Shown: piece by piece, positions 1,719 through 15,708 of the stretch
Position numbering within the stretch: the first letter of the stretch is position 1
Layout: each line of letters starts with the position of its first letter
Origin: Hyaloraphidium curvatum SAG 235-1
Lineage: Eukaryota > Fungi > Monoblepharomycota
Assembly (NCBI GenBank): GCA_025558095.1
Contig: JAIVFI010000009.1
Coordinates: 744,001 to 808,000, forward strand
Length of the DNA: 64,000 nt
Direction of reading: 5' to 3'
The notes under the pieces: generated by a model
The model's input: only the letters and a program-made list of their open reading frames with translations
Databases searched by the model: none
What the model was told of the DNA's origin: nothing
Position numbers and translations under genes: made by a program

Positions 1719-4700
1719 ATGGCGTCGCCGGCCGGGCTCTCTTCCACGCCGCCGGTCGTCGGCTCGCCCTCCTACGCGACGTCGCCGCCCTCCGCGTCCC
1801 TCCTCCCGGGCGCCTCGGTCCGCCAGCGGCGCATCGCGTGGTGCCCGCAGGGCGCGCTGTTCCCCGGCGCCGCAAAGGACGACAATGCGGACGACGGCGG
1901 GGAGCGGCCGCGGGGGGGCAGGGCCGCGCCGTACTTCGTCCTCGGGCTGCCGGAGTTGAAGCTGTACGAGTACCTCGGCAACGTGGGTCGATCGCGGTCC
2001 TCGGCACGATTGGCCTTCTCTGACGCGATTTCGTGCTTCCTTGACGCGCTTCCATCGTCCTCCCTCCGCGCTTTCGGCCGAATCCGCGTACGGGATACCT
2101 GCGACGCGTCGCCGGCACGCGTCTCGCTCGGCACCCCTTCACAACACGTTGCCTCTTTCTTCCTCGTTTTAACTGCCTGCCGTGTTGCAGAACCAGAATG
2201 CCTCGCACAATGCTCCGCCGGCGCGCCTGCTGGCCATCCACTCGGACTATGCCCTCCTCACCAAGCACTTTGCCTGGTCGCCGTCCCCTAGCACGCCGGA
2301 TCTGATCGCCATCGCCCAGGGCACGGGCAAGGTGGTGCTTGTCAAGCTGGGCATGTTCACGTGGCTCAGCACCGGGCCCATTGGCATCGGGGGCGCCGGA
2401 CCGGTCTCGGACACGTTCGTGCCTCCCGCGAGGCCCGATACGCCGCCGCAGCCCGCGCAGGGCACGCCGGCCCAGCAGTCGTCTCCGGCTCCTGCGGCCG
2501 CACCGTCGACCTTCTCGACCCTAACGTCGTTTATCCGATCGAGCCTTTCCTCCTCCCCGCCCACGGCTCCCCCGGCCGTACAACCGCCCGCCCTCTCATC
2601 AGCGAAGTTACTCGCCGAGTTCTCGCCCAAGCACCCGCGCGCCTGCAACGCGGTGGCCTTCTCCCCGGACGGACGGTATCTCGCCGCCGGCTACGAAAAG
2701 GTCCGCAACGACGCCGGGGTCTACGTCTGGGACCTCGAAGCCCGCGGTGACCGGGCCCCTGCCGCGCAATCCCAGCTCGCCAAATCCCTCGCCGGCACCA
2801 CAACGGCCCCCGCCGCGCCGCACCCCTTCGCCGGCGCCCACGCGCAGCCCCTCGGCCCCGCTGACCCCGTGGTCTCGCTGGCCTTCCTCTCCCCGCACCT
2901 GCTCGTCGCCGGCGTGCCGGGCAAGGGCATCCGGGGTTGGGATCTGCGGCACCACACCTCGGGCGCGCCGAGCTTCGCGATCGCGACCAAATCCATCCAC
3001 GGGCTCGCCGCGGATCCGTGGAACCCGTACCGCGTGGCCGGGTACGGGGACGACGGCGCGGTGCGGATCTTTGACGTGCGCAGGGGGGCGCTCGCGGCCC
3101 ATGCGCCGTACCCGGTGCCGGCGTCGTCGGAGCCGCTGCTCGCGCTGCCGACCGCCGACGTGTTTCCCAAGGGCGTCGCGCAGCTCTCGTGGTCGTTGGC
3201 GAGGTCGGGAATGCTCGCGGCGTCGGGCGTCGGCGCGGGTGTCGTGCGGCTCTGGGACGTGCGCGAGGCCGGAGGCGGCCCAGCCGCCGAATCGGGGCTG
3301 GAAAGCCAGCCCGTCGTCTGGCGAACAAAGACCATCCGAACCGGCAAGACCGGCGCGGCGGTCACGGGCCTGTGCTTCGTGCCCCCGCTTGTTTCGCCCC
3401 CGCGGGAGGGCAGTCCCGAGCCCGAGGCGGGGGAACCTCCCACACCCGCCGCGGGCAAGGACGCGGAGCACGGCTCGACGGCGCACAGGATCCTCGCGAG
3501 CCTGTCGGACGATACCATGGCGGTCTTGGACGTGCGGGAGGCGCAGAGGAACGCGTGGGGTGCGAGGGGGGGCAACGAGATGGCGTGGGTGGGGGGTAGG
3601 GGGGTCGTCGTTGTGGCGGAGGGGATCAGGGCGGCGGATTCCAAGGCGGGGGTGATGGCGATGGGACCGGGGACGGCGGTGGGGGAGATGGATGCGCCGG
3701 CGGTGCTGGGGATGGACGTGGGGGTGGTGATGCGCGAGAGGGCACGGGCCGGATACGGCGTCGAGGTATGTGCGTCCGCTTCGGGAGTGCATTCGCGCTG
3801 ATGCCATTCCTTTTTCGCAGCCTTCGGCGAACCTCGCGGTCTTTGCCAAGGATCCCGGGCCGTTCGGCAACGACCTGCAGCACCTGTCGGATCTATGGTC
3901 GTTCCTTGCGACGTCCAAGGAGCTCGCCACGTCGGGCGCCGCCCGCCTAGGCGACCGCGATTGGAGCTTCGCCGGTGTCGGCGAGGTCCTCGAAGACGCC
4001 CTCAAGGGATCCAACGGCACGCCAAAGGCGCTTCCTATTTCGGAACAGGCGCCTTCCGCCCCGACCCTGCCCCGGGACAATCCGCGCCAGGGCCTCCACC
4101 GCAACATGTCGATGCCCGCTTTCGGCTCCCTCCTCGACCAGAGCCTGCGCGAGGGCTTCCTCGAGGTGGCCGCGGACATGGAATCGCTTCCGTCGGACCA
4201 GAGGGCGGCCAAGGTCGTGATCGGGGAGGAGCACAAGCGGCTCGCGCTGGCCATGTGCGGCTGGGGCAGCCCGCATCCAGGATCCTCGTCCGGCGACAAC
4301 GGCGTGGACGAAGAGCTGGAAGATGCACTGCACACGATGGAGCTCGGCGGGCACTACGAGAAAGCTGCGGGCTGGGCGCTGTTCCGCGGTGCCAGCCTCG
4401 GGAGGGCGATCAAGTGCCTGAGGAGCTCGAACGAAGAAAGGCTCAAGCTGGTCGCCGTCGCGCTGTCGGCGGCGCTGCCGACGGGCACGAACCCGACAAC
4501 AGACTCGGCGGGCATCCTCGCCCGGGGCGGGTTTCCTGCCGTGTTCGTTGACCTCTGCTCGTCGCTCGCGACGGACCTGCAGGACCCGTATCTCCGAGCC
4601 ATGTTTGCCCTCGTGGCGAACGGGGGCGACTGGCACGTTGTTCTGGACGAGAAGGAGCTGCCGCTGCGCGACCGCGTCGGCGTCGCAGTGCGGTTCCTTT

Positions 4701-5578
4701 CCGACGACCAGCTCCTGTCGTACATCAAGCGCACCCGCGGCGTCATGATCCAGAGCGGCTCAATCGAGGGGATCTTGCTCACGGGCCTGCTCTCGGCTGA
4801 CGGCCAGGGCAGCACGCGGGCAAAGGACGGGATCCAGCTCCTGCAGAACCATGTGGACCGAACCGGCGATGCGCAGACGGCAGCCCTGTGCACCGCCATG
4901 GTCTACCCAGGCCGCGTGCAGGACAGGCGGACGGACGAGTGGGTGGACGCCTATCGGAGCCTCTTGGACCGCTGGGAAATGTTCCACGAGCGCGCGAGGT
5001 TCGACATTGCCCGCGGGCGGTACGCCAACTTTGCCTCCTGGAGCGCCAAGAGCTCCGTGCCCGGCACGCCGACGCTCACGCAGGTGTCGCCGCGGGGACT
5101 GTCGGTCCCGCCGCAGATTGCGGTGAGGTGCAACTTTTGCGGATCGGGCATCCAGCACCGCGTGGCGACGGGGAGGAAGGACTTCAAGGCCATCGCGTGC
5201 CCGACGTGCCGCAAGCCGCTCCCGCGGTGCTCGCTGTGCCTCATGCCTATGGGGACGTGGCCGACGAGCCTGGATACGGTGCCCGGAGGCGCAACCGCGG
5301 GCGCCGGACTGCTGAGCGCCGCCGCCAGCCCGGCCAACTCCCCGCCAAAGACCCCGATCGCGATCGTCAGCACGGCGTCGCGGAGCTCCATCAAGAAGGC
5401 GCCGTTGGATCCCACCTCGATGGGTCCCGGACCGACAGTGCCTTCGGGGTTCGACGCTTGGTTCACGTGGTGCGTCAGATGCCGGCACGGCGGACACAAC
5501 GTGCACGTGCGAGAGTGGTTCGCGGAGCACAGCGTGTGCCCCGTGACTGGATGCGGATGCAGGTGCTCTGCTCTGTAG
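1719..5578 (+). CDS. SEA4: GATOR2/SEA complex subunit MIOS/Sea4
   Basis: N-terminal WD40 repeats (RACNAVAF..LAAGYEKVRND..VWD); C-terminal CPTCRKPLPRCSLC...WFTWCVRCRHGGH..REWF..HSVCPVTGCGCRC zinc finger; introns near 1983-2190 and 3766-3820. Confidence 0.85.
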
Positions 5579-9195: not shown

Positions 9196-9545
9196 TCACA
9201 TCTGCGTCCGCCAGACCTTCGGCATCTCGGTCGCCATCCAGTTCACCCAGTCGCCGGTGGGCACTTCAACGAGCGTCCGCGGGTTGTACGCCTCCCTCAT
9301 CCTCCCCACGACGTCGGGCTGCTTCACGACGTAGATCCACGCGTCTTTGCGCTCGCTCTGACCGCCGTCCATCTCCACCGGCACGACTATCCGCGTATAA
9401 TGATTGGGGTGGCCCTCGATGTAGTCAAGCATCCTCAAAGCGTCCGGGCCCACGGTCCACAGATCGCCCCAGATCCGGGCCGGTGCACCGGGCGGGACCA
9501 AGGCCTCGCAGAGCAGATATGGGAACCGTCCGCTTTTGAATCCGT
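9196..9545 (-). pseudogene. Gamma-glutamylcyclotransferase (AIG2/GGACT-like), 3' part, separated by insertion
   Basis: (YG)FKSGRFPYLL..IWGDLWTV..LDYIEGHPNHYTRIVV..AWIY; joins in frame to 14217-14366 when the element and one TSD copy are removed. Confidence 0.85.
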
Positions 9546-9664
9546 AGGCAGAGGCAGAGGGGGAAGTTGGACGAGGGGACTGTCCTCCGTCGCTTCGCTC
9601 CGTCGTCGGCCCCTCGTGGCCGGTTAGGCCTGGACCGGAGGTCCTTATGACGTCTCCCTGTGCG
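9546..9664 (+). repeat. Left terminal inverted repeat
   Basis: AGGCAGAGGCAGAGGGGGA...CTCCGTCGCTTCGCTCCGTCG...GGCCGGTTAGGCCTGGACCGGAGGTCCTTATGACGTCTCCCTGTGCG; matches reverse complement of 14097-14216 (first 19 nt identical). Confidence 0.93.
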
Positions 9665-10160
9665 ACAGCTCCCTTGGCTCTCGTTCCTCTCTCCCGTCTC
9701 CTGTTGCCGGATGGGGGGAGTGGGGGGTCTCCCCCCCCCAAGGCTCCCGACCGTGCGAAGCAAGGAACTGCTGCGCGGAGCGCCGGGGGTTGTAGGGGGT
9801 TCCCCCCTACGCCGGGGTTCTCCCCTACCTTGAGTCGCTTTACTTTGCTTAGCGTATGCTTTAGCATTTGCTAAGGTCTTTTCAAACACCTTTCATAGGT
9901 AGAACTTAGGTGTTTACTTTTAACTTTTTCTTACACATTTCATACTTATAGGTGCCTTAGGTGGGTATTTCAAGATTTCATTCGTATATTTTGTTCCTTT
10001 GGTTGTTTCCTCTCTTTTGGGGGGAGCGGCGCTGGATCCCGAGAGTCCCACCTAAGCACCTAAAAGATCTAAATCATTCTCTTACCTAGTCTTCGTGACA
10101 GTTTCTTCAATCCTATGCTTCCGTGGTTGCCCATTGCGCTTCGTTGTTTCCCTCTCACCT

Positions 10161-10315
10161 ACGCGTCTCTTTTCTGAGACCTCTACGCGTCGCGCCCACA
10201 CGCCCTCTCACTCTTTCGGACGCTTTGCTTTCGGACCCTGTTGCCGCATCTCGTTCGGACGCCTCTCTCACTTGGACGTGCTCTCAGAACGCGTCGCTCT
10301 TGCCTTGGACGCGTC
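10161..10315 (+). promoter_or_regulatory. Cluster of four ACGCGTC motifs (MCB-like) upstream of the caspase-like gene
   Basis: ACGCGT at 10161, 10185, 10289, 10309; ATG at 10330. Confidence 0.35.
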
Positions 10316-10329
10316 CCTTCCTCCCCCCA

Positions 10330-11014
10330 ATGGATTCGGACACGCAAATGGACACTGTCATGCCTACTCTCGTCATTTTTGCACCTGGCGACGGATATAC
10401 TCCGGACGTCATCGAGTATGATTGGCGCCGTCTTCAGACACATTGGGCCAAAGGTATGGTTGCGCATCCCGCCCCTTGAGTTCGTACTTACGACTTTAGA
10501 TCCCCATACCATTCAAGGCTTTCTGGCTTACTCTGCTGGGCAGGCTCTTCAAGAAATTATCAAGTTCGTGTCAACCCAATCACCGCAGAATCTTCGTCTC
10601 TGCTACAGCGGACACGGTGCAGATAACCAGCGCTATCGCATTGTTGCAACTCCGTTTGGCCTACCTTCTTATCACCGGACCTCTGGGCACCACGGCTGGA
10701 TCTTCCAAGATGACTCCATTCTGACCTTTTCTGACCTCTCGGATGCACTTGCTCGTACAACACGAACTTGTCCCACAAACATTCACCTGTTCGTTAATGC
10801 TTGTTTCGCTGACAGCTGGATCCCTTCCATTCAATCCCACTCTCAGTCGTCGCATTTGATCTCTTTTAAATCTTTTCACACTATTACCAATTCTGGTGAA
10901 TGTCAGTTAACCCAGTCAGGCCAACTTCTCTGGTGGAAAAAGTCCTGGTTTTCGAGAGAAGGCAGTACTCGGATCGCACAGTGGAAATGGAACACATGGA
11001 TCGACCATATATGA
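10330..11014 (+). CDS. Caspase/metacaspase-like (clan CD) cysteine peptidase, two exons, 212 aa
   Basis: Exons 10330-10453 and 10500-11014 (intron GTATGG...ACTTAC...TTTAG, 46 nt, restores frame); LCYSGHG and LFVNACF dyad motifs each following a hydrophobic strand. Confidence 0.7.
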
Positions 11015-11241
11015 AACTACCCGTCGTACTTTACTGTATCGGTGATAGTATTCGATTCGGCAAACAATGGGATTGGTACCGTATTGTTAGTAAGCACCCC
11101 GGTTCCTTTCCCGATGCTTTCAATATTACTTTGCGAAAACCCTACCGGGAGACCTTTGGTATACCTGGTGGTGAACTCCGAACTATAGAATTTGATTCAT
11201 GTAGTTCCCATTTTGATTCTCTCATCAAATCTAGTCTCTGA
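11011..11241 (+). CDS. Hypothetical 76-aa element protein
   Basis: MKLPVVLYCIGDSIRFG...; start overlaps upstream stop as ATGA. Confidence 0.35.
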   Translation: MKLPVVLYCIGDSIRFGKQWDWYRIVSKHPGSFPDAFNITLRKPYRETFGIPGGELRTIEFDSCSSHFDSLIKSSL

Positions 11242-11667
11242 AAAGAAGTTCTCGACAATGTCCCAGTACCTGAAGGTTCGTCTCTTCGTAGTCTACAACT
11301 TTACTCAGCGCAGCGTGAACATTTTCTTCAGCTGTTCAGAAGACACTATCGTAAGCTTCACTCTAGGCACTTGTATACTGATTGATTCCCCTATCTCTTT
11401 GAGATCCACTCTCTTGGCTTGTTTCGTTCTTCCGGCATCTCTCTCATATACCACTCCATCAAACCAAAATGTATTTGATCCTTCATAGATGTTGTAATCA
11501 TGGTATGCTGCAAACGCACCCTTCTCGGTAACTATCTTTATACCCTTCGGTCCCGTCATTGTCAATACCAGTCTTAATGTTGCAAATTGATCCGGGCTTA
11601 TTTGGACATTTTCATAGCGACGCTCCGCTACTTGTTCTGTTTTGGTCTTCGATACGTTCAAACCCAT
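11231..11667 (-). CDS. Hypothetical element protein with N-myristoylation-like start
   Basis: MGLNVSK start 30 bp downstream of helicase stop; ORF ends 11305 unspliced, or 11231 if a 47-nt intron 11378..11332 is removed. Confidence 0.55.
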
Positions 11668-11696
11668 TTTATCATCAGGGACAACTTCCTTTTCTT

Positions 11697-13562
11697 TTAT
11701 ACGTTGCAATCATTTGTCCACTTCCACCCTTTCCATCCATATTGTTGCGGCGATCCAAACCTCCGACGTTTGTCCGTCAACCTTTCTCCTGCCAATAGCA
11801 TGTCCATCTTGGCGTACGCTTCCTTTTTCGTCGGCGCCGCACGCTTCTCTCCATACATCCGCCTCCATGCCTCCTTGATCTTCTCGTATACCTTGCTACT
11901 TGACACTCCGCTCCCTTCGCTGTCATCCTCCTCCAAACACTCTTCCTTCACCTGTTGGTACACGTTGTTCTCTTCCATATACTGTTGCGCCGCTTCTCTC
12001 ATCTGCTCCGGTACTTTAACCAGTTTTTCTTCCTTGTAGCTCCTGTAACCCTTCAGCATTTCTCCCATCACCACCCATTTCCATCCGTCTACTCTCTCAC
12101 TTAATGTATCATCCTGGTAATACTCGTTCTTTGTCTCATCCACTTCTTCTGTGATGCTCTTGAACTTGGATTTGAATGGCGTCACTCTGATCCTTCGCTT
12201 CATTGCTTCGTCCACTCCATTGAATATCGGCAAATCGTTGCACACCAAAAAGAGCTTGAATGTCGGATCAAACCAACCCTGCTCCCCAAACAATTTCCTG
12301 TAATTCAACCGATCTTCTCCACTTAGCAGCTTGAACTTCTGCTCGTTTATGTTGCCTCCTGGCATGGTTTCTGACATATATACCAGGCGTGCTCCTATCA
12401 TGCTCGTCAGTGTTGGCGTTGCTGCATCCGCTTTTGTCGCTTCACTCAAAAATGATGCTTCAATCTTCACCGCAAACTCTTCCAGCACTTTCTCCAATAT
12501 CTTTATCAAAATCCCTTTCCCATTTGATCCTGATCCATGACCAAATACGAATATTTGATCTTTTGTATACCCTGCTAGCATGCTCCCCATATACTTTATC
12601 ATCCATTCCCTGGTTTCTTCATCCGGAAATACCTTCCCCATGTAGTCCCTGAACTCTTTCAAAGTCTCTGGGTCCTCATACATCTTGATCTCATTGTACT
12701 CGTACTTGAGCTGTTTTGTCATCATGTCCTCTGGTCTTCCAGGTCTGAATTTGTCCTCTGCTAAATCATAGATTCCATTCAAAAATGGTATCACCGTCTT
12801 GTTCTGATTGAGTTTTGCCGCAAAGTCCTTCCGTTCACAGCATGTCTTGAATTCGTCCGCCACCGCTTTCTTCATGTTCGCTTGCTCCAGACTCATTATC
12901 ACTTTCCTTATCAACTTCAACTTGAATTCTTGCTTCTCTTGCCTGTAGATTCGCTCTGCTTCCAAAAACAATCCTTTGTAGTTTGATGACTTGATTAGCT
13001 TGTACACTCCTCGTTCATCCGTCTTCTCCCAAATGTGACTTGTGAATATGTACCAAGCTCCATCATACACCACCCTTCCTTTGTTCACTGCATGCAGCAG
13101 CTCCGCTAGTTTCTCTTGTGTTCCACTCAGAGCATTCAATATAATCCCGTTTAGGTTTTCATCTTCCACTATCTTGACGTCATCCTGCGAAAAATCGTGG
13201 ATTACTGCTGTCTCCCTTTTTGATGTCGGTGCTATCGTTTGAAATATTATGTTGATGCTGTTGTCGTTGTTTATTGCTACCGGCCAGTGCTTCCATCCCT
13301 CCCTTGGCCTTATGTGATTGTTCTCGCATACGTACTTCCAGCCTTGTTTCGTTAGCGTTATTGTGTTCCATTTGCTCACTTTATCTTCAAATTCGCATGC
13401 TTCACATTCTCCAGGGTACATCGCTTCCAACTTGTCACCCCTTTGTTTGAATTTCGTTAAATCTTCGTTGAATCCTGGCACCTTGGCCAGTTCTCTTTTC
13501 AACGTTTGCACCAAGTCCATGCTACTCATACTGTTTATTTTTTTTTCTTGAGTCCTGACCAT
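11697..13562 (-). CDS. D5/P4-family superfamily 3 helicase (621 aa) with N-terminal putative zinc ribbon
   Basis: CEAC...CENNH; D5_N-like WYIF..IWE and IPFLNGIYDL...FRPGRPEDM; Walker A GSGSNGKG; Walker B RLVYMSE; motif C LFLVCNDLP; arginine finger AMKRRIRVTPF; intronless. Confidence 0.92.
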   Translation of the reverse strand: MVRTQEKKINSMSSMDLVQTLKRELAKVPGFNEDLTKFKQRGDKLEAMYPGECEACEFEDKVSKWNTITLTKQGWKYVCENNHIRPREGWKHWPVAINNDNSINIIFQTIAPTSKRETAVIHDFSQDDVKIVEDENLNGIILNALSGTQEKLAELLHAVNKGRVVYDGAWYIFTSHIWEKTDERGVYKLIKSSNYKGLFLEAERIYRQEKQEFKLKLIRKVIMSLEQANMKKAVADEFKTCCERKDFAAKLNQNKTVIPFLNGIYDLAEDKFRPGRPEDMMTKQLKYEYNEIKMYEDPETLKEFRDYMGKVFPDEETREWMIKYMGSMLAGYTKDQIFVFGHGSGSNGKGILIKILEKVLEEFAVKIEASFLSEATKADAATPTLTSMIGARLVYMSETMPGGNINEQKFKLLSGEDRLNYRKLFGEQGWFDPTFKLFLVCNDLPIFNGVDEAMKRRIRVTPFKSKFKSITEEVDETKNEYYQDDTLSERVDGWKWVVMGEMLKGYRSYKEEKLVKVPEQMREAAQQYMEENNVYQQVKEECLEEDDSEGSGVSSSKVYEKIKEAWRRMYGEKRAAPTKKEAYAKMDMLLAGERLTDKRRRFGSPQQYGWKGWKWTNDCNV

Positions 13563-13634
13563 CTCTTTTATACCGTCAAGTCATTTACTCCCATAAAAGA
13601 AGCCCACAGCTGTTTTTCTCTTTCCTACACTTCA

Positions 13635-13847
13635 ATGGGACGCCGTAACTTCAAATACCTCCACGAACCCTGTGCCAGGTGTGGTGGCCTTAGTCAAACT
13701 GGCCATCACATTGTCCCTCCCCGCATTCGCAAATCTATCCCTCTTTCCATTCAAGGCCGATCTGAATTGATTATGCTTTGTTTTCCATGCAAAAGTACAG
13801 TTAATCAGGAATACTGTCAAAATTATATAATAAAAAGGAAGGACTAA
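13635..13847 (+). CDS. Minimal HNH-like zinc-finger protein (70 aa)
   Basis: CARCG...HHIVP...LIMLCFPC, the CxxC-HHIxP-LCxxC pattern of HNH endonucleases; divergent from the helicase. Confidence 0.65.
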   Translation: MGRRNFKYLHEPCARCGGLSQTGHHIVPPRIRKSIPLSIQGRSELIMLCFPCKSTVNQEYCQNYIIKRKD

Positions 13848-13911
13848 AGAAGAGAGTATAAAACCAATACATGCCTTAAAATGTTCTGACATTGCAGACA
13901 TTACAGACAAA

Positions 13912-14035
13912 GGCTAATGCTAAGCGAGTGTTTAAGCATATGCTTAATGTGCTAAGGAAGAAGAGACTAGGAACCGGGAAGCATGAGGATGCTAAGGAGA
14001 CTGTGGACTGATAGGAACTAGACTGATAGGAACTA
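13912..14035. repeat. Subterminal repeats: GCTAAG motifs, perfect palindrome and 15-bp tandem duplication
   Basis: TTAAGCATATGCTTAA 13932-13947; GACTGATAGGAACTA x2 at 14006-14035. Confidence 0.75.
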
Positions 14036-14096
14036 ACTATGGCGTCAGGGGGGTTTCAACCCCCCAAGCCCCCCCAGACACGAGAAGGGAAGACTC

Positions 14097-14216
14097 CGCA
14101 CAGGAAGACGTCATAAGGACCTACGGTCCAGGCCTAACCGGCCCAGAGGGGCCGCCGACGGAGCGAAGCGACGGAGAGCGAGACCCCTCTCGTAGTCTCC
14201 CCCTCTGCCTCTGCCT
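14097..14216 (-). repeat. Right terminal inverted repeat
   Basis: CGCACAGGAAGACGTCATAAGGACCTACGGTCCAGGCCTAACCGGCC...TCCCCCTCTGCCTCTGCCT followed by TSD TCCGT. Confidence 0.93.
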
Positions 14217-14366
14217 TCCGTAGAGGTAGAAGGGGTCCGTAGTTCGCGCGGTTCCGACGAAAGTCGACGACGCGTCCTCTTCCAGGACATAGGATCGCGG
14301 CTGCCCCCGGCGGAGCGTGCCGTATGTGAAAACAAGAAACTTTTGGCCTGCCGAACTTGGCAGCAT
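14217..14366 (-). pseudogene. Gamma-glutamylcyclotransferase (AIG2/GGACT-like), 5' part
   Basis: MLPSSAGQKFLVFTYGTLRRGQPRSYVL...TARTTDPFYLYG, exactly 50 codons up to the insertion; FxYGTL motif. Confidence 0.85.
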
Positions 14367-14502
14367 TCCTTTCCGGGCTCGGCACGCGCGTCGACGAAAG
14401 TGGGCGACAAAAGCCGATCGGCGCGCGATCGCACCCCATCGCGCGCTGCACTCCGCCCCGTCCCCCCCGCACAAACAGCGCCCGACGGCCGCTCTCCTCC
14501 AA

Positions 14503-15708
14503 ATGGCCGCCGCCGTCGAGTCTCCGGCACCCTCCGCGGCCGCCGCGGGGCCGAGCGGCGAGACCTTCGCCACGACGCGCAACCTCGGCGCCCGCTACTA
14601 CCACGACCCGGCCATCTTCGCCCGCGAGCAGCGCACCATCTTCTCGAAGACCTGGCTGTTCCTGACCAATGTTTCCCGCGTCGCTGCTGCTGCGGAAGGG
14701 TCGGGAGAGGCCGAGACGCCCGAGGGGGACGGCGCCCTGCGGGAGGGCCATGCGCACTGGCCCGGCGTCGGGCGCGTGAAGGTCCTCCTCTGCAAGATCG
14801 CCGGCTTCGAGTTTGCCCTCCGCCCGGGAGCCACGTCCACCACCGTCGACGGGCTTCTCCTCTCCTCCCCCGTCCCCGAACACTCCGCCTCTCTTCCCCG
14901 CGCGATCCGAGCGCACGCCACCCAACCGGGCGGCTGGGTTTTCGTCAACCTGGCCCCTGAGGAGGAAAAAGTGGTCCCGTGCACCGAGTTTCTCGCGGGC
15001 CTGGAGGGCGGGAGGCTGAAGGAGATCGATTGGGAGGAGTACTCGTTCGACGGGGAGTTCTCTATCGCGGGCTCCTTCAACTGGAAGGCCTACGTGGACA
15101 ACTTCCAAGAATGTACGTCGTTGGTTCCTGCTCCATGTTGCTCCTACCTTACACGCGCGGCGTCTCCAGGCTACCACTGCCCCACGGGCCACGCCGTCAC
15201 GTTCGCCTCATACGCTCTGCAGACGTACAAGATCATCAACACGGGCAACTACTCGCAGCACTTTTGCGAGCGCAAGGCGGACCTCGGCAAGCGGCGGCCG
15301 AGCAAGGGAGACGGGCTGGGTGGCGGGCAGGGGCTCTGGCTGTTCTTCTACCCCAACGCGTCGATGAGCTGCTGTGGGTCGACCTTCTACGCGGCTCATG
15401 CGGATAACAAGCTGACAACCATCGTTCGGACAGACGCCCCCGCCATCTCGATGTCGATAATCAACCCCGTCTCCCCCACCCGCACCGTCCTCTACTACCA
15501 GGTCTTCATGCGCCGCGGCACGCCCCCGGCGACGCGCGACGCCTTCTACGCCAGCCTGCGCGAGGTGCTCGCCGAGGACTGCGAGCTCACGGGCGGCGCG
15601 CAGAGGAACTACGAGGGCGGGGTGTGGGCCGCGGGGCCGCTGCACCCGGGGAGGGAGAACGGGGTGCTGTGGTTCCAGAATAAGGTCAGGGAGGCGCTGA
15701 AGGGTTAA
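14503..15708 (+). CDS. Ring-hydroxylating/choline monooxygenase-like alpha subunit lacking Rieske ligands
   Basis: YYHDPAIFAREQRTIFSKTW, WVFVNL, FNWKAYVDNFQE|CYHCPTGH, ED..L....QR, ENGVLWFQ; two short introns. Confidence 0.75.
   Translation: MAAAVESPAPSAAAAGPSGETFATTRNLGARYYHDPAIFAREQRTIFSKTWLFLTNVSRVAAAAEGSGEAETPEGDGALREGHAHWPGVGRVKVLLCKIAGFEFALRPGATSTTVDGLLLSSPVPEHSASLPRAIRAHATQPGGWVFVNLAPEEEKVVPCTEFLAGLEGGRLKEIDWEEYSFDGEFSIAGSFNWKAYVDNFQECTSLVPAPCCSYLTRAASPGYHCPTGHAVTFASYALQTYKIINTGNYSQHFCERKADLGKRRPSKGDGLGGGQGLWLFFYPNASMSCCGSTFYAAHADNKLTTIVRTDAPAISMSIINPVSPTRTVLYYQVFMRRGTPPATRDAFYASLREVLAEDCELTGGAQRNYEGGVWAAGPLHPGRENGVLWFQNKVREALKG

What the first reader, a model, noticed from the sequence alone, without database searches (positions are those of the whole stretch)
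9541..14221. Transposase-less 4.7-kb TIR element carrying an SF3 helicase, HNH-like protein and caspase-like protease
Seen: ~120-bp imperfect TIRs with AG...CT termini starting (AGGCAG)2, a perfect 5-bp TSD (TCCGT), an AT-richer interior, and four to five tightly packed genes. No DDE transposase, integrase, tyrosine recombinase, HUH Rep, DNA polymerase or capsid motif is visible. Known: AG...CT termini, short terminal repeats and 5-6-bp TSDs characterise Polintons/Mavericks, and D5-like helicases are typical of Polinton-like viruses, virophages, NCLDVs and P4-like satellites. Inference: this is a compact satellite or mini-replicon that supplies its own helicase and is integrated in trans, or by an unrecognised enzyme. 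I do not recognise this gene combination as a described transposon family.
Basis: partly seen in the sequence, partly recalled or inferred. Interest (0 to 1): 0.93.

Follow-up and report, generated by a model that had tools for sequence, protein, structure and literature searches.

The report
Helicase-carrying mini virus-like element in fungus
A 4.7-kb virus-like mobile DNA element that carries its own replication helicase, but no recognisable enzyme for inserting itself, has landed inside an ordinary gene of the aquatic fungus Hyaloraphidium curvatum. It is most likely a shortened, helper-dependent relative of the polinton-like viruses and transposons.

Summary
Window 9546-14216 is one 4,671-bp insertion. 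It has ~130-bp imperfect terminal inverted repeats (first 19 nt identical, AG...CT ends, AGGCAG repeated), a perfect 5-bp duplication (TCCGT), and 37-57% GC against ~67% in the flanks. It splits a host GGACT/AIG2-like coding exon cleanly. The host is the fungus Hyaloraphidium curvatum (Monoblepharomycota).

The only securely identified gene is an intact D5/P4-type SF3 helicase. Its 11 closest full-length relatives (29-40% identity, some from the chytrid Quaeritorhiza) are ~950 aa and carry an N-terminal PrimPol domain. That domain is absent here and anywhere else in the window. No integrase, transposase, polymerase or capsid was found in any ORF tested.

"Caspase-like" and "HNH-like" rest on motifs and sub-threshold scores. 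The caspase-like gene has one relative among 1.84 billion representative proteins. The HNH-like ORF competes with an antisense ORF that fits the helicase's codon usage better.

Best reading (about 0.5): a non-autonomous, shortened member of the polinton-like supergroup, inserted in trans by an rve-type integrase. Main rival: a naturally compact satellite replicon, analogous to a transpoviron but not a member of that family.

The parts
9541..9545 (.). Left copy of the 5-bp target-site duplication (TCCGT)
   Evidence: Read directly. It abuts the first base of the left TIR and is identical to 14217-14221.
9546..9675 (+). Left terminal inverted repeat. It begins AGGCAG AGGCAG AGG. Weaker similarity to the right end continues to about 9748.
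   Evidence: (I1, I2).
9715..9815 (.). Subterminal G-run/C-run palindromes, with a counterpart at 14048-14074
   Evidence: sequence; D3: 27 nt, 81%.
9844..9875 (.). Subterminal TTAGCA-type short repeats, mirrored at 13918-13996
   Evidence: Six of the seven CTTAGCR matches in the window lie in the element, and five of these lie in the two subterminal zones.
9900..10065 (.). AT-rich stretch (GC 0.40) holding three exact copies and one near copy of CACCTAAG in both orientations. This is an iteron-like cluster and a candidate binding or origin region (inference).
   Evidence: 0.73 exact copies expected in the whole window; three lie within 152 bp; I3.
10330..11241 (+). Orphan gene with a caspase-like His...Cys motif pair. 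The public model KAI9027049.1 (P0059, 212 aa) covers roughly its first three quarters. The reading frame changes twice along this span. One change is an annotated 46-nt GT-AG intron. The other is unresolved (intron, frameshift, or a separate 113-aa ORF).
   Evidence: GC is 52-57% in its 5' part and codon usage is unlike the helicase's.
11305..11709 (-). Small ORF directly downstream of the helicase, overlapping its last codons. The likely ATG is at 11667 (about 120 aa). No homologues were found.
   Evidence: In-frame codon usage matches the helicase's.
11688..11715 (-). 28-nt motif containing TATAAAAG upstream of the small ORF. It is shared with 13559-13586, upstream of the helicase. Promoter-like (inference).
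   Evidence: D4, 75% over 28 nt; two matches where 0.19 are expected.
11697..13562 (-). Intact D5/P4-type SF3 helicase, 621 aa from the first ATG (later ATGs at 13529 and 13520). It has a Zn-ribbon-like N-terminus, D5_N, a P-loop helicase and a C-terminal domain, but no PrimPol/AEP primase domain.
   Evidence: D5_N 4e-19; PHROG DNA primase 5e-58; TIGR01613 at 150 bits, cut-off 108.7; poxvirus D5/E5 and ASFV C962R.
13559..13586 (-). Second copy of the TATAAAAG-containing motif, at the helicase start
   Evidence: (D4).
13632..13910 (-). 92-aa ORF upstream of the helicase on the same strand, with one predicted hydrophobic helix. It competes with the HNH-like ORF on the opposite strand.
   Evidence: no family. 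Its codon usage fits the helicase model in frame better than the HNH-like ORF does.
13635..13847 (+). HNH-like ORF with a CxxC...HH...CxxC pattern (70 aa from its ATG), divergent from the helicase
   Evidence: Pfam HNH E 0.078, 13.6 bits, cut-off 21.4; profile positions 1-42 of 47. Searches gave nothing. Codon usage does not support it.
14006..14035 (.). Perfect tandem 15-mer, two copies
   Evidence: (D15).
14086..14216 (-). Right terminal inverted repeat
14217..14221 (.). Right copy of the 5-bp target-site duplication (TCCGT)
14222..14366 (-). 5' piece of the interrupted host GGACT/AIG2-like gene (ATG at 14366)
   Evidence: (Pfam GGACT profile 1-31).
9196..9540 (-). 3' piece of the interrupted host GGACT/AIG2-like gene (stop at 9196)
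   Evidence: (GGACT 2.5e-13, profile 44-119; AIG2_2).

Best explanation
This is a genuine and probably recent insertion of a 4,671-bp non-autonomous virus-like DNA element into a coding exon of the nuclear genome of the fungus Hyaloraphidium curvatum.

Most likely it is a shortened derivative of an element of the polinton-like supergroup: a Maverick/Polinton, polinton-like virus, virophage, or one of their plasmid-like kin. It has kept both ends and a replicative SF3 helicase. It has lost, or never carried, the primase domain, the polymerase, the integrase and the capsid module.

Shown: the TIRs; the 5-bp TSD; the split host gene; the intact helicase, which keeps every invariant residue of its clade; the missing PrimPol domain; and the absence of any recognisable integration enzyme.

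Inferred:
- The 5-bp staggered-cut signature and the AG...CT ends point to an rve/DDE-type integrase supplied in trans by an autonomous relative or a helper virus.
- The helicase may act on the element's own DNA. Candidate recognition sites are the iteron-like CACCTAAG cluster in an AT-rich stretch and the subterminal repeats.
- The two minus-strand genes share a TATA-containing upstream motif, which suggests co-regulation.
- The GC-richer, intron-bearing caspase-like gene is probably an accessory gene of separate origin.
For: Ends and insertion:
- TIRs, TSD and AG...CT termini are.
- The host GGACT gene is split with consecutive profile coverage and the same codon phase at both TSD copies.

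Helicase:
- Identity.
- The 11 closest full-length relatives are 925-975 aa and carry PF09250 PrimPol + D5_N + DUF5906.
- Homology to the window protein starts only at their residue ~430-475. No PrimPol remnant exists anywhere in the window.
- The window protein shares all 50 invariant alignment columns of its clade.

Gene content:
- No integrase, transposase, pPolB or capsid in the ORFs tested.
- ORF134 shares the helicase's codon usage. The caspase-like gene does not.

Literature:
- Polintons have 100-1500 bp TIRs and 5-8 bp TSDs (PMC10748475).
- Mavirus and Mavericks make 5-6 bp TSDs, and truncated TIR-flanked endogenous virophage elements of 5-15 kb lacking morphogenesis genes exist in Cafeteria (PMC8547959).
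- Polinton-like integrases and giant viruses occur in zoosporic fungi (PMC13533422).
- A capsid-less, plasmid-like lineage related to mavirus is reported from fungi (PMC13215967).
Against: - No hallmark gene of the supergroup (double-jelly-roll capsid, packaging ATPase, adenain-type protease, pPolB, rve integrase) is present, so the link rests on the end signature and a helicase type that is also common in phages, plasmids and giant viruses. Bacterial P4-type primases reach 25-33% identity and giant-virus contigs 28%.
- No longer relative with the same ends was seen.
- The TIRs are only ~83% identical, unlike the regenerated, near-perfect TIRs described for truncated endogenous virophages.
- The AG...CT rule for Polintons is recalled from Kapitonov & Jurka 2006. 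I did not verify it in a paper I could read.
Confidence: 0.5

Rival explanations
1. It is a naturally compact, capsid-less satellite or plasmid-like replicon, and not a deletion product. It would be a functional analogue of a transpoviron. It would encode only a helicase and a few small proteins, replicate with the machinery of a helper (for example a giant virus or polinton-like virus of zoosporic fungi), and be integrated by the helper's integrase.
For: - The helicase is intact and keeps every invariant residue of its clade.
- The gene layout is tight, with a shared upstream motif for two co-directional genes.
- An iteron-like cluster sits in an AT-rich stretch and structured subterminal repeats sit at both ends. 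These look like maintained cis elements and not debris.
- Helicase-only S3H proteins without a primase domain are normal in mavirus-type virophages (PMC3671162).
- Capsid-less plasmid-like lineages from fungi and transpovirons are documented (PMC13215967, PMC5499653).
- Giant viruses persist in zoosporic fungi (PMC13533422).
Against: - All 11 full-length close relatives carry the PrimPol domain, so its absence here looks derived.
- Only one copy is visible, and no free form or helper is in evidence.
- Transpovirons proper use an SF1 helicase fused to an inactivated polymerase, which is not present here (PMC3671162, PMC5499653).
- The caspase-like gene shows frame changes that may include damage.
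Confidence: 0.27
2. It is a non-autonomous member of a cellular cut-and-paste TIR transposon family of the host. It would have captured a viral helicase gene fragment and other genes between its ends, and would be moved by that family's transposase.
For: - TIRs with subterminal short repeats and a short TSD are generic features of DNA transposons.
- The element is a mosaic in composition and codon usage. The caspase-like part is 52-57% GC with an intron, and the helicase part 41-46% GC.
- The helicase is N-terminally short relative to its kin, as a captured fragment would be.
Against: - By my recollection of Repbase, the cellular superfamilies that give 5-bp TSDs (Transib, some hAT) have different termini.
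- The helicase ORF is intact with its own upstream motif, which it shares with the next gene. This is unlike typical captured fragments.
- No transposase relic lies in or near the element.
Confidence: 0.13
3. It is not a mobile unit at all. It would be a leftover of an endogenised giant-virus segment, a contaminant, or an assembly chimera, and the repeats and duplication would be fortuitous.
For: - D5-type helicase-primase genes occur in giant-virus fossils in fungal genomes (PMC7017919).
- The nearest IMG/VR hit is a giant-virus bin.
Against: - A 19-nt perfect and ~130-nt imperfect inverted repeat sits exactly at the composition boundaries, flanked by a perfect 5-bp duplication.
- The host reading frame resumes in phase on the other side.
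- No other viral gene is nearby.
Confidence: 0.03

Closest known systems
Truncated endogenous mavirus-like elements (EMALEs) of Cafeteria burkhardae; more broadly, non-autonomous Maverick/Polinton and polinton-like-virus derivatives
   Same: Integrated in a nuclear genome and bounded by TIRs. The short TSD falls in the 3-6 bp range. The element is AT-richer than the host and carries a primase/helicase-type gene. Short forms (5-15 kb) without morphogenesis genes are documented (PMC8547959).
   Different: No capsid, ATPase, protease, pPolB or rve integrase is present at all. At 4.7 kb it is below the reported range. The TIRs are imperfect (~83%). The host is a fungus. One gene carries a spliceosomal intron, whereas EMALE genes have none.
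Transpovirons of Mimiviridae
   Same: Small (~7 kb) and capsid-less, with TIRs. They encode a helicase plus a few small proteins, depend on a helper, and can integrate (PMC3671162, PMC7031253).
   Different: Transpovirons encode an SF1 helicase fused to an inactivated polymerase, and a conserved Zn-ribbon and DNA-binding protein set (PMC5499653). Here the helicase is SF3 (D5/P4 type), and none of the other proteins matched anything.
P4-type satellite primase-helicase (alpha protein family, TIGR01613)
   Same: The helicase passes the curated TIGR01613 cut-off. P4 alpha binds iterons at its origin (my own knowledge), and an iteron-like cluster is present here.
   Different: P4 is a bacterial satellite with a tyrosine integrase and att-site integration. 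It has no TIRs or TSD. The bacterial hits are only 25-33% identical.
PrimPol-S3H proteins in chytrid and other (mostly unnamed) assemblies, e.g. Quaeritorhiza haematococci KAJ3080401.1 and KAJ3082128.1
   Same: These are the closest sequence relatives (29-40% identity over ~500 aa). They share the Zn-ribbon, D5_N, helicase and C-terminal domains.
   Different: They are ~950 aa and carry an N-terminal PrimPol domain and a linker that the window protein lacks. Their genomic context is unknown.

Membership tests
Polinton/Maverick | [quoted passage not shown] | tested here: not met
   No polymerase family in any element ORF tested against Pfam, PHROGs or NCBIfam.
Polinton/Maverick | Retrovirus-like (rve) integrase | tested here: not met
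   No rve/DDE hit. None in the flanking host ORFs either.
Polinton/Maverick | Morphogenesis module (major and minor capsid, packaging ATPase, adenain-type protease) | tested here: not met
   No hits (same calls). The element has no room for it (4.7 kb).
Polinton/Maverick | TIRs of 100-1500 bp and TSD of 5-8 bp (PMC10748475); AG...CT termini (recalled, not verified) | tested here: met
   TIRs of ~130 bp, a 5-bp TSD and AG...CT ends.
Polinton-like viruses / virophages | Double-jelly-roll major capsid protein | tested here: not met
   No capsid family hit. The sequence libraries may miss divergent capsids, but no unassigned ORF is long enough.
Polinton-like viruses / virophages | Primase-S3H helicase | tested here: inconclusive
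   The S3H helicase is present and intact. The primase domain is absent. Helicase-only forms are known in the mavirus group (PMC3671162).
Transpoviron | SF1 helicase fused to inactivated pPolB | tested here: not met
   The helicase is SF3, D5/P4 type. Definition from PMC5499653 and PMC3671162.
Transpoviron | Association with a giant virus as an episome | not testable with these tools
   Only one integrated copy in one window is available.
D5/P4-type SF3 helicase (TIGR01613, D5_N) | D5_N domain plus P-loop SF3 helicase core above curated thresholds | tested here: met
   D5_N at 69.8 bits (cut-off 22.4). TIGR01613 at 150.5 bits (cut-off 108.7). PDB poxvirus D5/E5 at 5e-10. DUF5906 at 26.5 bits is just under its 27.6 cut-off.
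Caspase/metacaspase (Peptidase C14) | Caspase-hemoglobinase fold with a catalytic His-Cys dyad | tested here: inconclusive
   The SGHG and downstream Cys motifs are conserved between P0059 and its only homologue, P0060. Pfam C14 appears only for P0060, at E 0.16 and 12.1 bits (cut-off 21.4). Nothing was found for P0059 or in PDB. The AlphaFold models had pLDDT 31 and 37, so no fold search was run.
HNH endonuclease (PF01844) | Beta-beta-alpha-metal motif above threshold | tested here: inconclusive
   E 0.078 and 13.6 bits against a 21.4 cut-off, covering profile positions 1-42 of 47. The CxxC...HH...CxxC pattern is visible. Codon usage favours the antisense ORF.
Classical non-autonomous TIR DNA transposon | An autonomous partner with matching termini that encodes a transposase | not testable with these tools
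   The host assembly is not in any searchable collection. There is no second copy in the window or in the 32 loci fetched by then.

The most novel reading that the evidence does not exclude
The element represents an undescribed class of compact, capsid-less and integrase-less helicase replicons of zoosporic fungi. It would be a fungal counterpart of transpovirons, built on an SF3 helicase instead of an SF1 helicase. It would use Polinton-type ends to integrate through a helper's integrase, keep its own origin-like iterons, and carry an orphan caspase-like accessory gene. It would then be the first satellite-type member of the mobilome of fungal giant viruses or polinton-like viruses.
Probability: 0.2. 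Interest if true: 0.75.

Novelty: new variant of a known kind. Interest (0 to 1): 0.5.

Why it matters
Giant viruses and polinton-like integrases have only recently been documented in zoosporic fungi. Their satellites and mobile parasites are essentially unknown.

This is a cleanly bounded element that keeps only a helicase and its ends, and it sits in a Monoblepharomycota genome. It gives a concrete handle (termini, helicase clade, orphan gene) for finding the rest of that mobilome in fungal assemblies. It also helps ask how small an integrating virus-like replicon can become.

It is also a plain example of a host gene (a gamma-glutamyl cyclotransferase-like gene) knocked out by such an insertion.

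If it turns out to be a single decayed copy, it is an ordinary endogenous viral remnant of modest interest.

Tried and rejected
The contigs of the close helicase relatives and any other copies in the source assembly could therefore not be read. This was the most important step lost.

Searches for other copies of the element:
- The terminal 19-mer in IMG/VR gave two hits (L001, L002). Similarity stops after 20-24 nt, so both are chance.
- No second copy of any part of the element lies in the window or in the 32 loci fetched by then.

Searches for helicase relatives:
- IMG/VR, JGI metagenomes and GTDB genomes gave mostly distant relatives (21-33%), such as giant-virus bins and bacterial P4-type primases.
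- The one closer metagenome hit (L024, 40%) is a truncated helicase relic on a 2.6-kb contig.
- The small IMG/VR contigs L006, L007 and L011-L014 have no TIRs.

Other element genes:
- Caspase-like gene: one homologue in the exhaustive search, none in IMG/VR, and no Pfam, NCBIfam, PADLOC or PDB assignment.
- Two AlphaFold runs failed. I therefore ran no fold search, because it would have been meaningless.
- ORF134: no homologue and no family.

Other checks:
- Rfam gave only a chance sub-threshold match. No tRNA genes were found.
- Transpoviron membership was considered and rejected on helicase superfamily.
- Transib and hAT (5-bp TSD superfamilies) were considered and rejected on termini, from memory only.

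- I did not search the caspase-like gene joined across its second frame change. The pieces were searched apart, by reference.
- I made no profile-profile comparison with a caspase family, because no tool-supplied caspase alignment was to hand.

Slips, recorded as required:
- In my private reasoning early on, I worked out by eye where one frame change of the caspase-like gene lies. That place is not in the notes or the report.
- In one search a script joined the two exons of the public model in memory, only to check that they give P0059. It printed the exon lengths, the intron length and the splice dinucleotides. Nothing joined was saved or printed.

Full report

Yes. The window is GC-rich (about 65-70%) except for 9.9-14.0 kb, where GC falls to 37-57%. 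That island is bounded by inverted repeats.
- The terminal 19-mer occurs exactly twice in 64 kb, at 9546-9564 (+) and 14198-14216 (-). Chance expectation is 0.03.
- The two ends align over about 131 columns with 109 identities and one gap. They include an 80-nt core at 94%.
- Weaker similarity, including G-run/C-run palindromes, extends to about 200 bp.
- The ends read AG...CT and begin with two and a half copies of AGGCAG.
- TCCGT lies immediately outside both ends, at 9541-9545 and 14217-14221.

**2.

The flanks are the two halves of one host gene on the minus strand.
- The piece 14222-14582 matches positions 1-31 of the Pfam GGACT (gamma-glutamyl cyclotransferase, AIG2-like) profile.
- The piece 9196-9540 matches positions 44-119 at E 2.5e-13.
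- The gene starts at 14366 and stops at 9196. The two TSD copies lie in the same codon phase.

I compared the pieces apart and did not join them. The insertion is therefore real, and it inactivates this copy of the gene. Both halves are still open, which suggests a recent event or a heterozygous one.

**3. Host**

The plus-strand gene inside the element is 100% identical to NCBI protein KAI9027049.1 of Hyaloraphidium curvatum, on an 849-kb contig. This is a Monoblepharomycota fungus. The neighbouring ORFs encode ordinary eukaryotic proteins such as MIOS, a Rieske-type oxygenase and TMEM120. No tRNA genes were found.

**4. The helicase**

ORF 11697-13562 (-), 621 aa, is an intact D5/P4-type SF3 helicase.
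- D5_N scores 4e-19.
- The best PHROG 'DNA primase' family scores 5e-58.
- TIGR01613 scores above its curated cut-off.
- The nearest solved structures are poxvirus D5/E5 and ASFV C962R.

Its nearest relatives form a diverse clade, 27-59% identical to one another and 29-40% to the window protein. Three of these relatives are from the chytrid Quaeritorhiza haematococci. The rest come from unnamed NCBI, Logan and JGI assemblies.

The 11 full-length members are 925-975 aa and carry an N-terminal PrimPol domain (PF09250) plus a linker. Homology to the window protein begins only at their residue ~430-475. tblastn finds no PrimPol remnant anywhere in the window. The window protein keeps the Zn-ribbon-like segment and all 50 invariant columns of the clade. 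So it is a helicase-only form of a primase-helicase, and its helicase part looks functional.

More distant relatives are giant-virus bins (28%) and bacterial P4-type primases (25-33%).

**5. The other ORFs**

*(a) ORF 11305-11709 (-)* overlaps the helicase stop.
- Its likely ATG is at 11667.
- It has no homologue or family.
- Its in-frame codon usage matches the helicase's and the other frames do not, so it is probably real.
- A 28-nt motif containing TATAAAAG precedes both it and the helicase (D4).

*(b) The 'caspase-like' gene, 10330-11241 (+).*
- The public model (P0059, 212 aa) is two exons joined over a 46-nt GT-AG intron.
- Along the whole span the frame changes twice. One change is that intron. 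The other is unresolved: it may be an intron, a frameshift, or the start of a separate 113-aa ORF.
- I searched the pieces apart and left the joined step out.
- Among 1.84 billion representatives there is one relative, P0060 (128 aa, on a 2.7-kb Logan contig; 34% identity by BLASTP, E 4e-15). It conserves an SGHG motif and a downstream Cys motif.
- The only family signal is Peptidase_C14 for P0060, at E 0.16.
- PDB searches and two AlphaFold runs gave nothing usable.
- The gene is GC-richer in its 5' part than the rest of the interior and uses codons differently from the helicase.
- 'Caspase-like' is a reasonable lead, not a finding.

*(c) The right end holds two overlapping antisense candidates.*
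- One is an HNH-like ORF at 13635-13847 (+), with Pfam HNH at E 0.078 and a CxxC...HH...CxxC pattern.
- The other is a 92-aa ORF at 13632-13910 (-) with one hydrophobic helix. It lies co-directionally upstream of the helicase and fits the helicase's codon usage better.
- At most one is likely to be real.

*(d) No ORF tested matches a transposase, integrase, Rep, polymerase or capsid*. Pfam covered nearly all ORFs of 50 aa or more; PHROGs, NCBIfam and PADLOC covered only the main candidates.

**6. Non-coding anatomy**
- Between the left TIR and the caspase-like gene lies a 165-bp AT-rich stretch (GC 0.40). It holds three exact copies and one near copy of CACCTAAG in both orientations. Only 0.73 exact copies are expected in the entire window.
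- Both subterminal zones carry TTAGCA-type short repeats.
- The right one also has a perfect tandem 15-mer.

These look like maintained cis elements. That they serve as helicase or integrase binding sites is inference.

**7. How it most likely works**

A 5-bp staggered cut with defined inverted ends is the signature of a DDE/rve-type integrase or transposase. None is encoded here, so integration in trans is the simplest reading.

The end signature falls within what is reported for Polintons/Mavericks (TIRs of 100-1500 bp, TSDs of 5-8 bp; PMC10748475) and for mavirus (5-6 bp; PMC8547959). The AG...CT rule is from my memory of Kapitonov & Jurka 2006.

Truncated, TIR-flanked endogenous virophage elements of 5-15 kb without morphogenesis genes are documented in Cafeteria (PMC8547959). 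Polinton-like integrases and persistent giant viruses are documented in zoosporic fungi (PMC13533422). A capsid-less, plasmid-like lineage related to mavirus is reported from fungi (PMC13215967).

With the missing PrimPol domain, this makes a shortened non-autonomous derivative of a polinton-like-supergroup element the best explanation (about 0.5).

The main rival (about 0.27) is a naturally compact helper-dependent replicon. It would be like a transpoviron in lifestyle but not in membership, since transpovirons use an SF1 helicase (PMC3671162, PMC5499653). A cellular transposon that captured viral genes (about 0.13) and a non-mobile remnant or artefact (about 0.03) follow.

**8. Comparison and novelty**

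The element fails the gene-content tests for Polinton/Maverick, polinton-like virus/virophage and transpoviron, and passes only the end-signature test. So I do not file it as a member of any of them.

It works like a non-autonomous element of that supergroup. I rate it a new variant of a known kind, in an unusual host phylum, with an orphan accessory gene. Interest is moderate (0.5). The anatomy is clean and gives usable search handles, but with one copy and no context the more exciting satellite reading remains unproven.

**9. Limits and conduct**
- The source assembly itself could not be searched, so copy number, empty sites and autonomous partners are unknown.
- Break places are not listed.
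- A demonstration of mobility or replication lies outside what this report may propose. An assembly-wide census and read-level junction and depth analysis are the best descriptive substitutes.

Noticed in passing
window 9196-9540 and 14222-14366 (-): The element knocks out a single-exon host GGACT/AIG2-like (gamma-glutamyl cyclotransferase family) gene. Both halves are still open reading frames, so the insertion is recent or the other allele may be intact.
   Followed up: partly
window 14317-15708 (+): The neighbouring Rieske-type ring-hydroxylating oxygenase-like gene reads through what looks like a short in-frame intron of about 57 nt. This suggests that short introns are normal in this host, which makes the 46-nt intron annotated inside the element plausible.
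   Followed up: no
L024:1-2582 (peat metagenome contig Ga0182030_10180751): This contig holds a 190-aa C-terminal relic of a helicase of the same clade (40% identity). Beside it lies an ORF that to my eye resembles a Mutator-like transposase. It is probably another fungal genome fragment with a decayed relative.
   Followed up: partly
P0060 (Logan assembly, 2,682-bp contig): This is the only relative of the element's caspase-like protein among 1.84 billion representative proteins. Its source organism and context are unknown. The family is essentially an orphan pair.
   Followed up: partly
P0011, P0012, P0014 (Quaeritorhiza haematococci, contigs of 7.6-9.4 kb): This chytrid assembly holds three divergent copies of the PrimPol-helicase (two of them 56% identical to each other). 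That hints at a multi-copy integrated element family in another zoosporic fungus.
   Followed up: no
window 9546-14216: The minus strand is purine-rich across almost the whole element (negative GC and AT skew on the plus strand). This includes the part where the only supported gene lies on the plus strand, so the strand asymmetry is not simply a matter of coding direction.
   Followed up: partly
window 14128-14262 (+): There is a sub-threshold Rfam match to the HCV cis-acting replication element (21 bits against a gathering score of 140), overlapping the right TIR and the junction. I take it for chance.
   Followed up: yes
window 2182-5578 (+): A MIOS (GATOR2 subunit) homologue is split over two long ORFs (a WD40 part and an alpha-solenoid/zinc-ribbon part). 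Presumably this is one intron-containing host gene.
   Followed up: no
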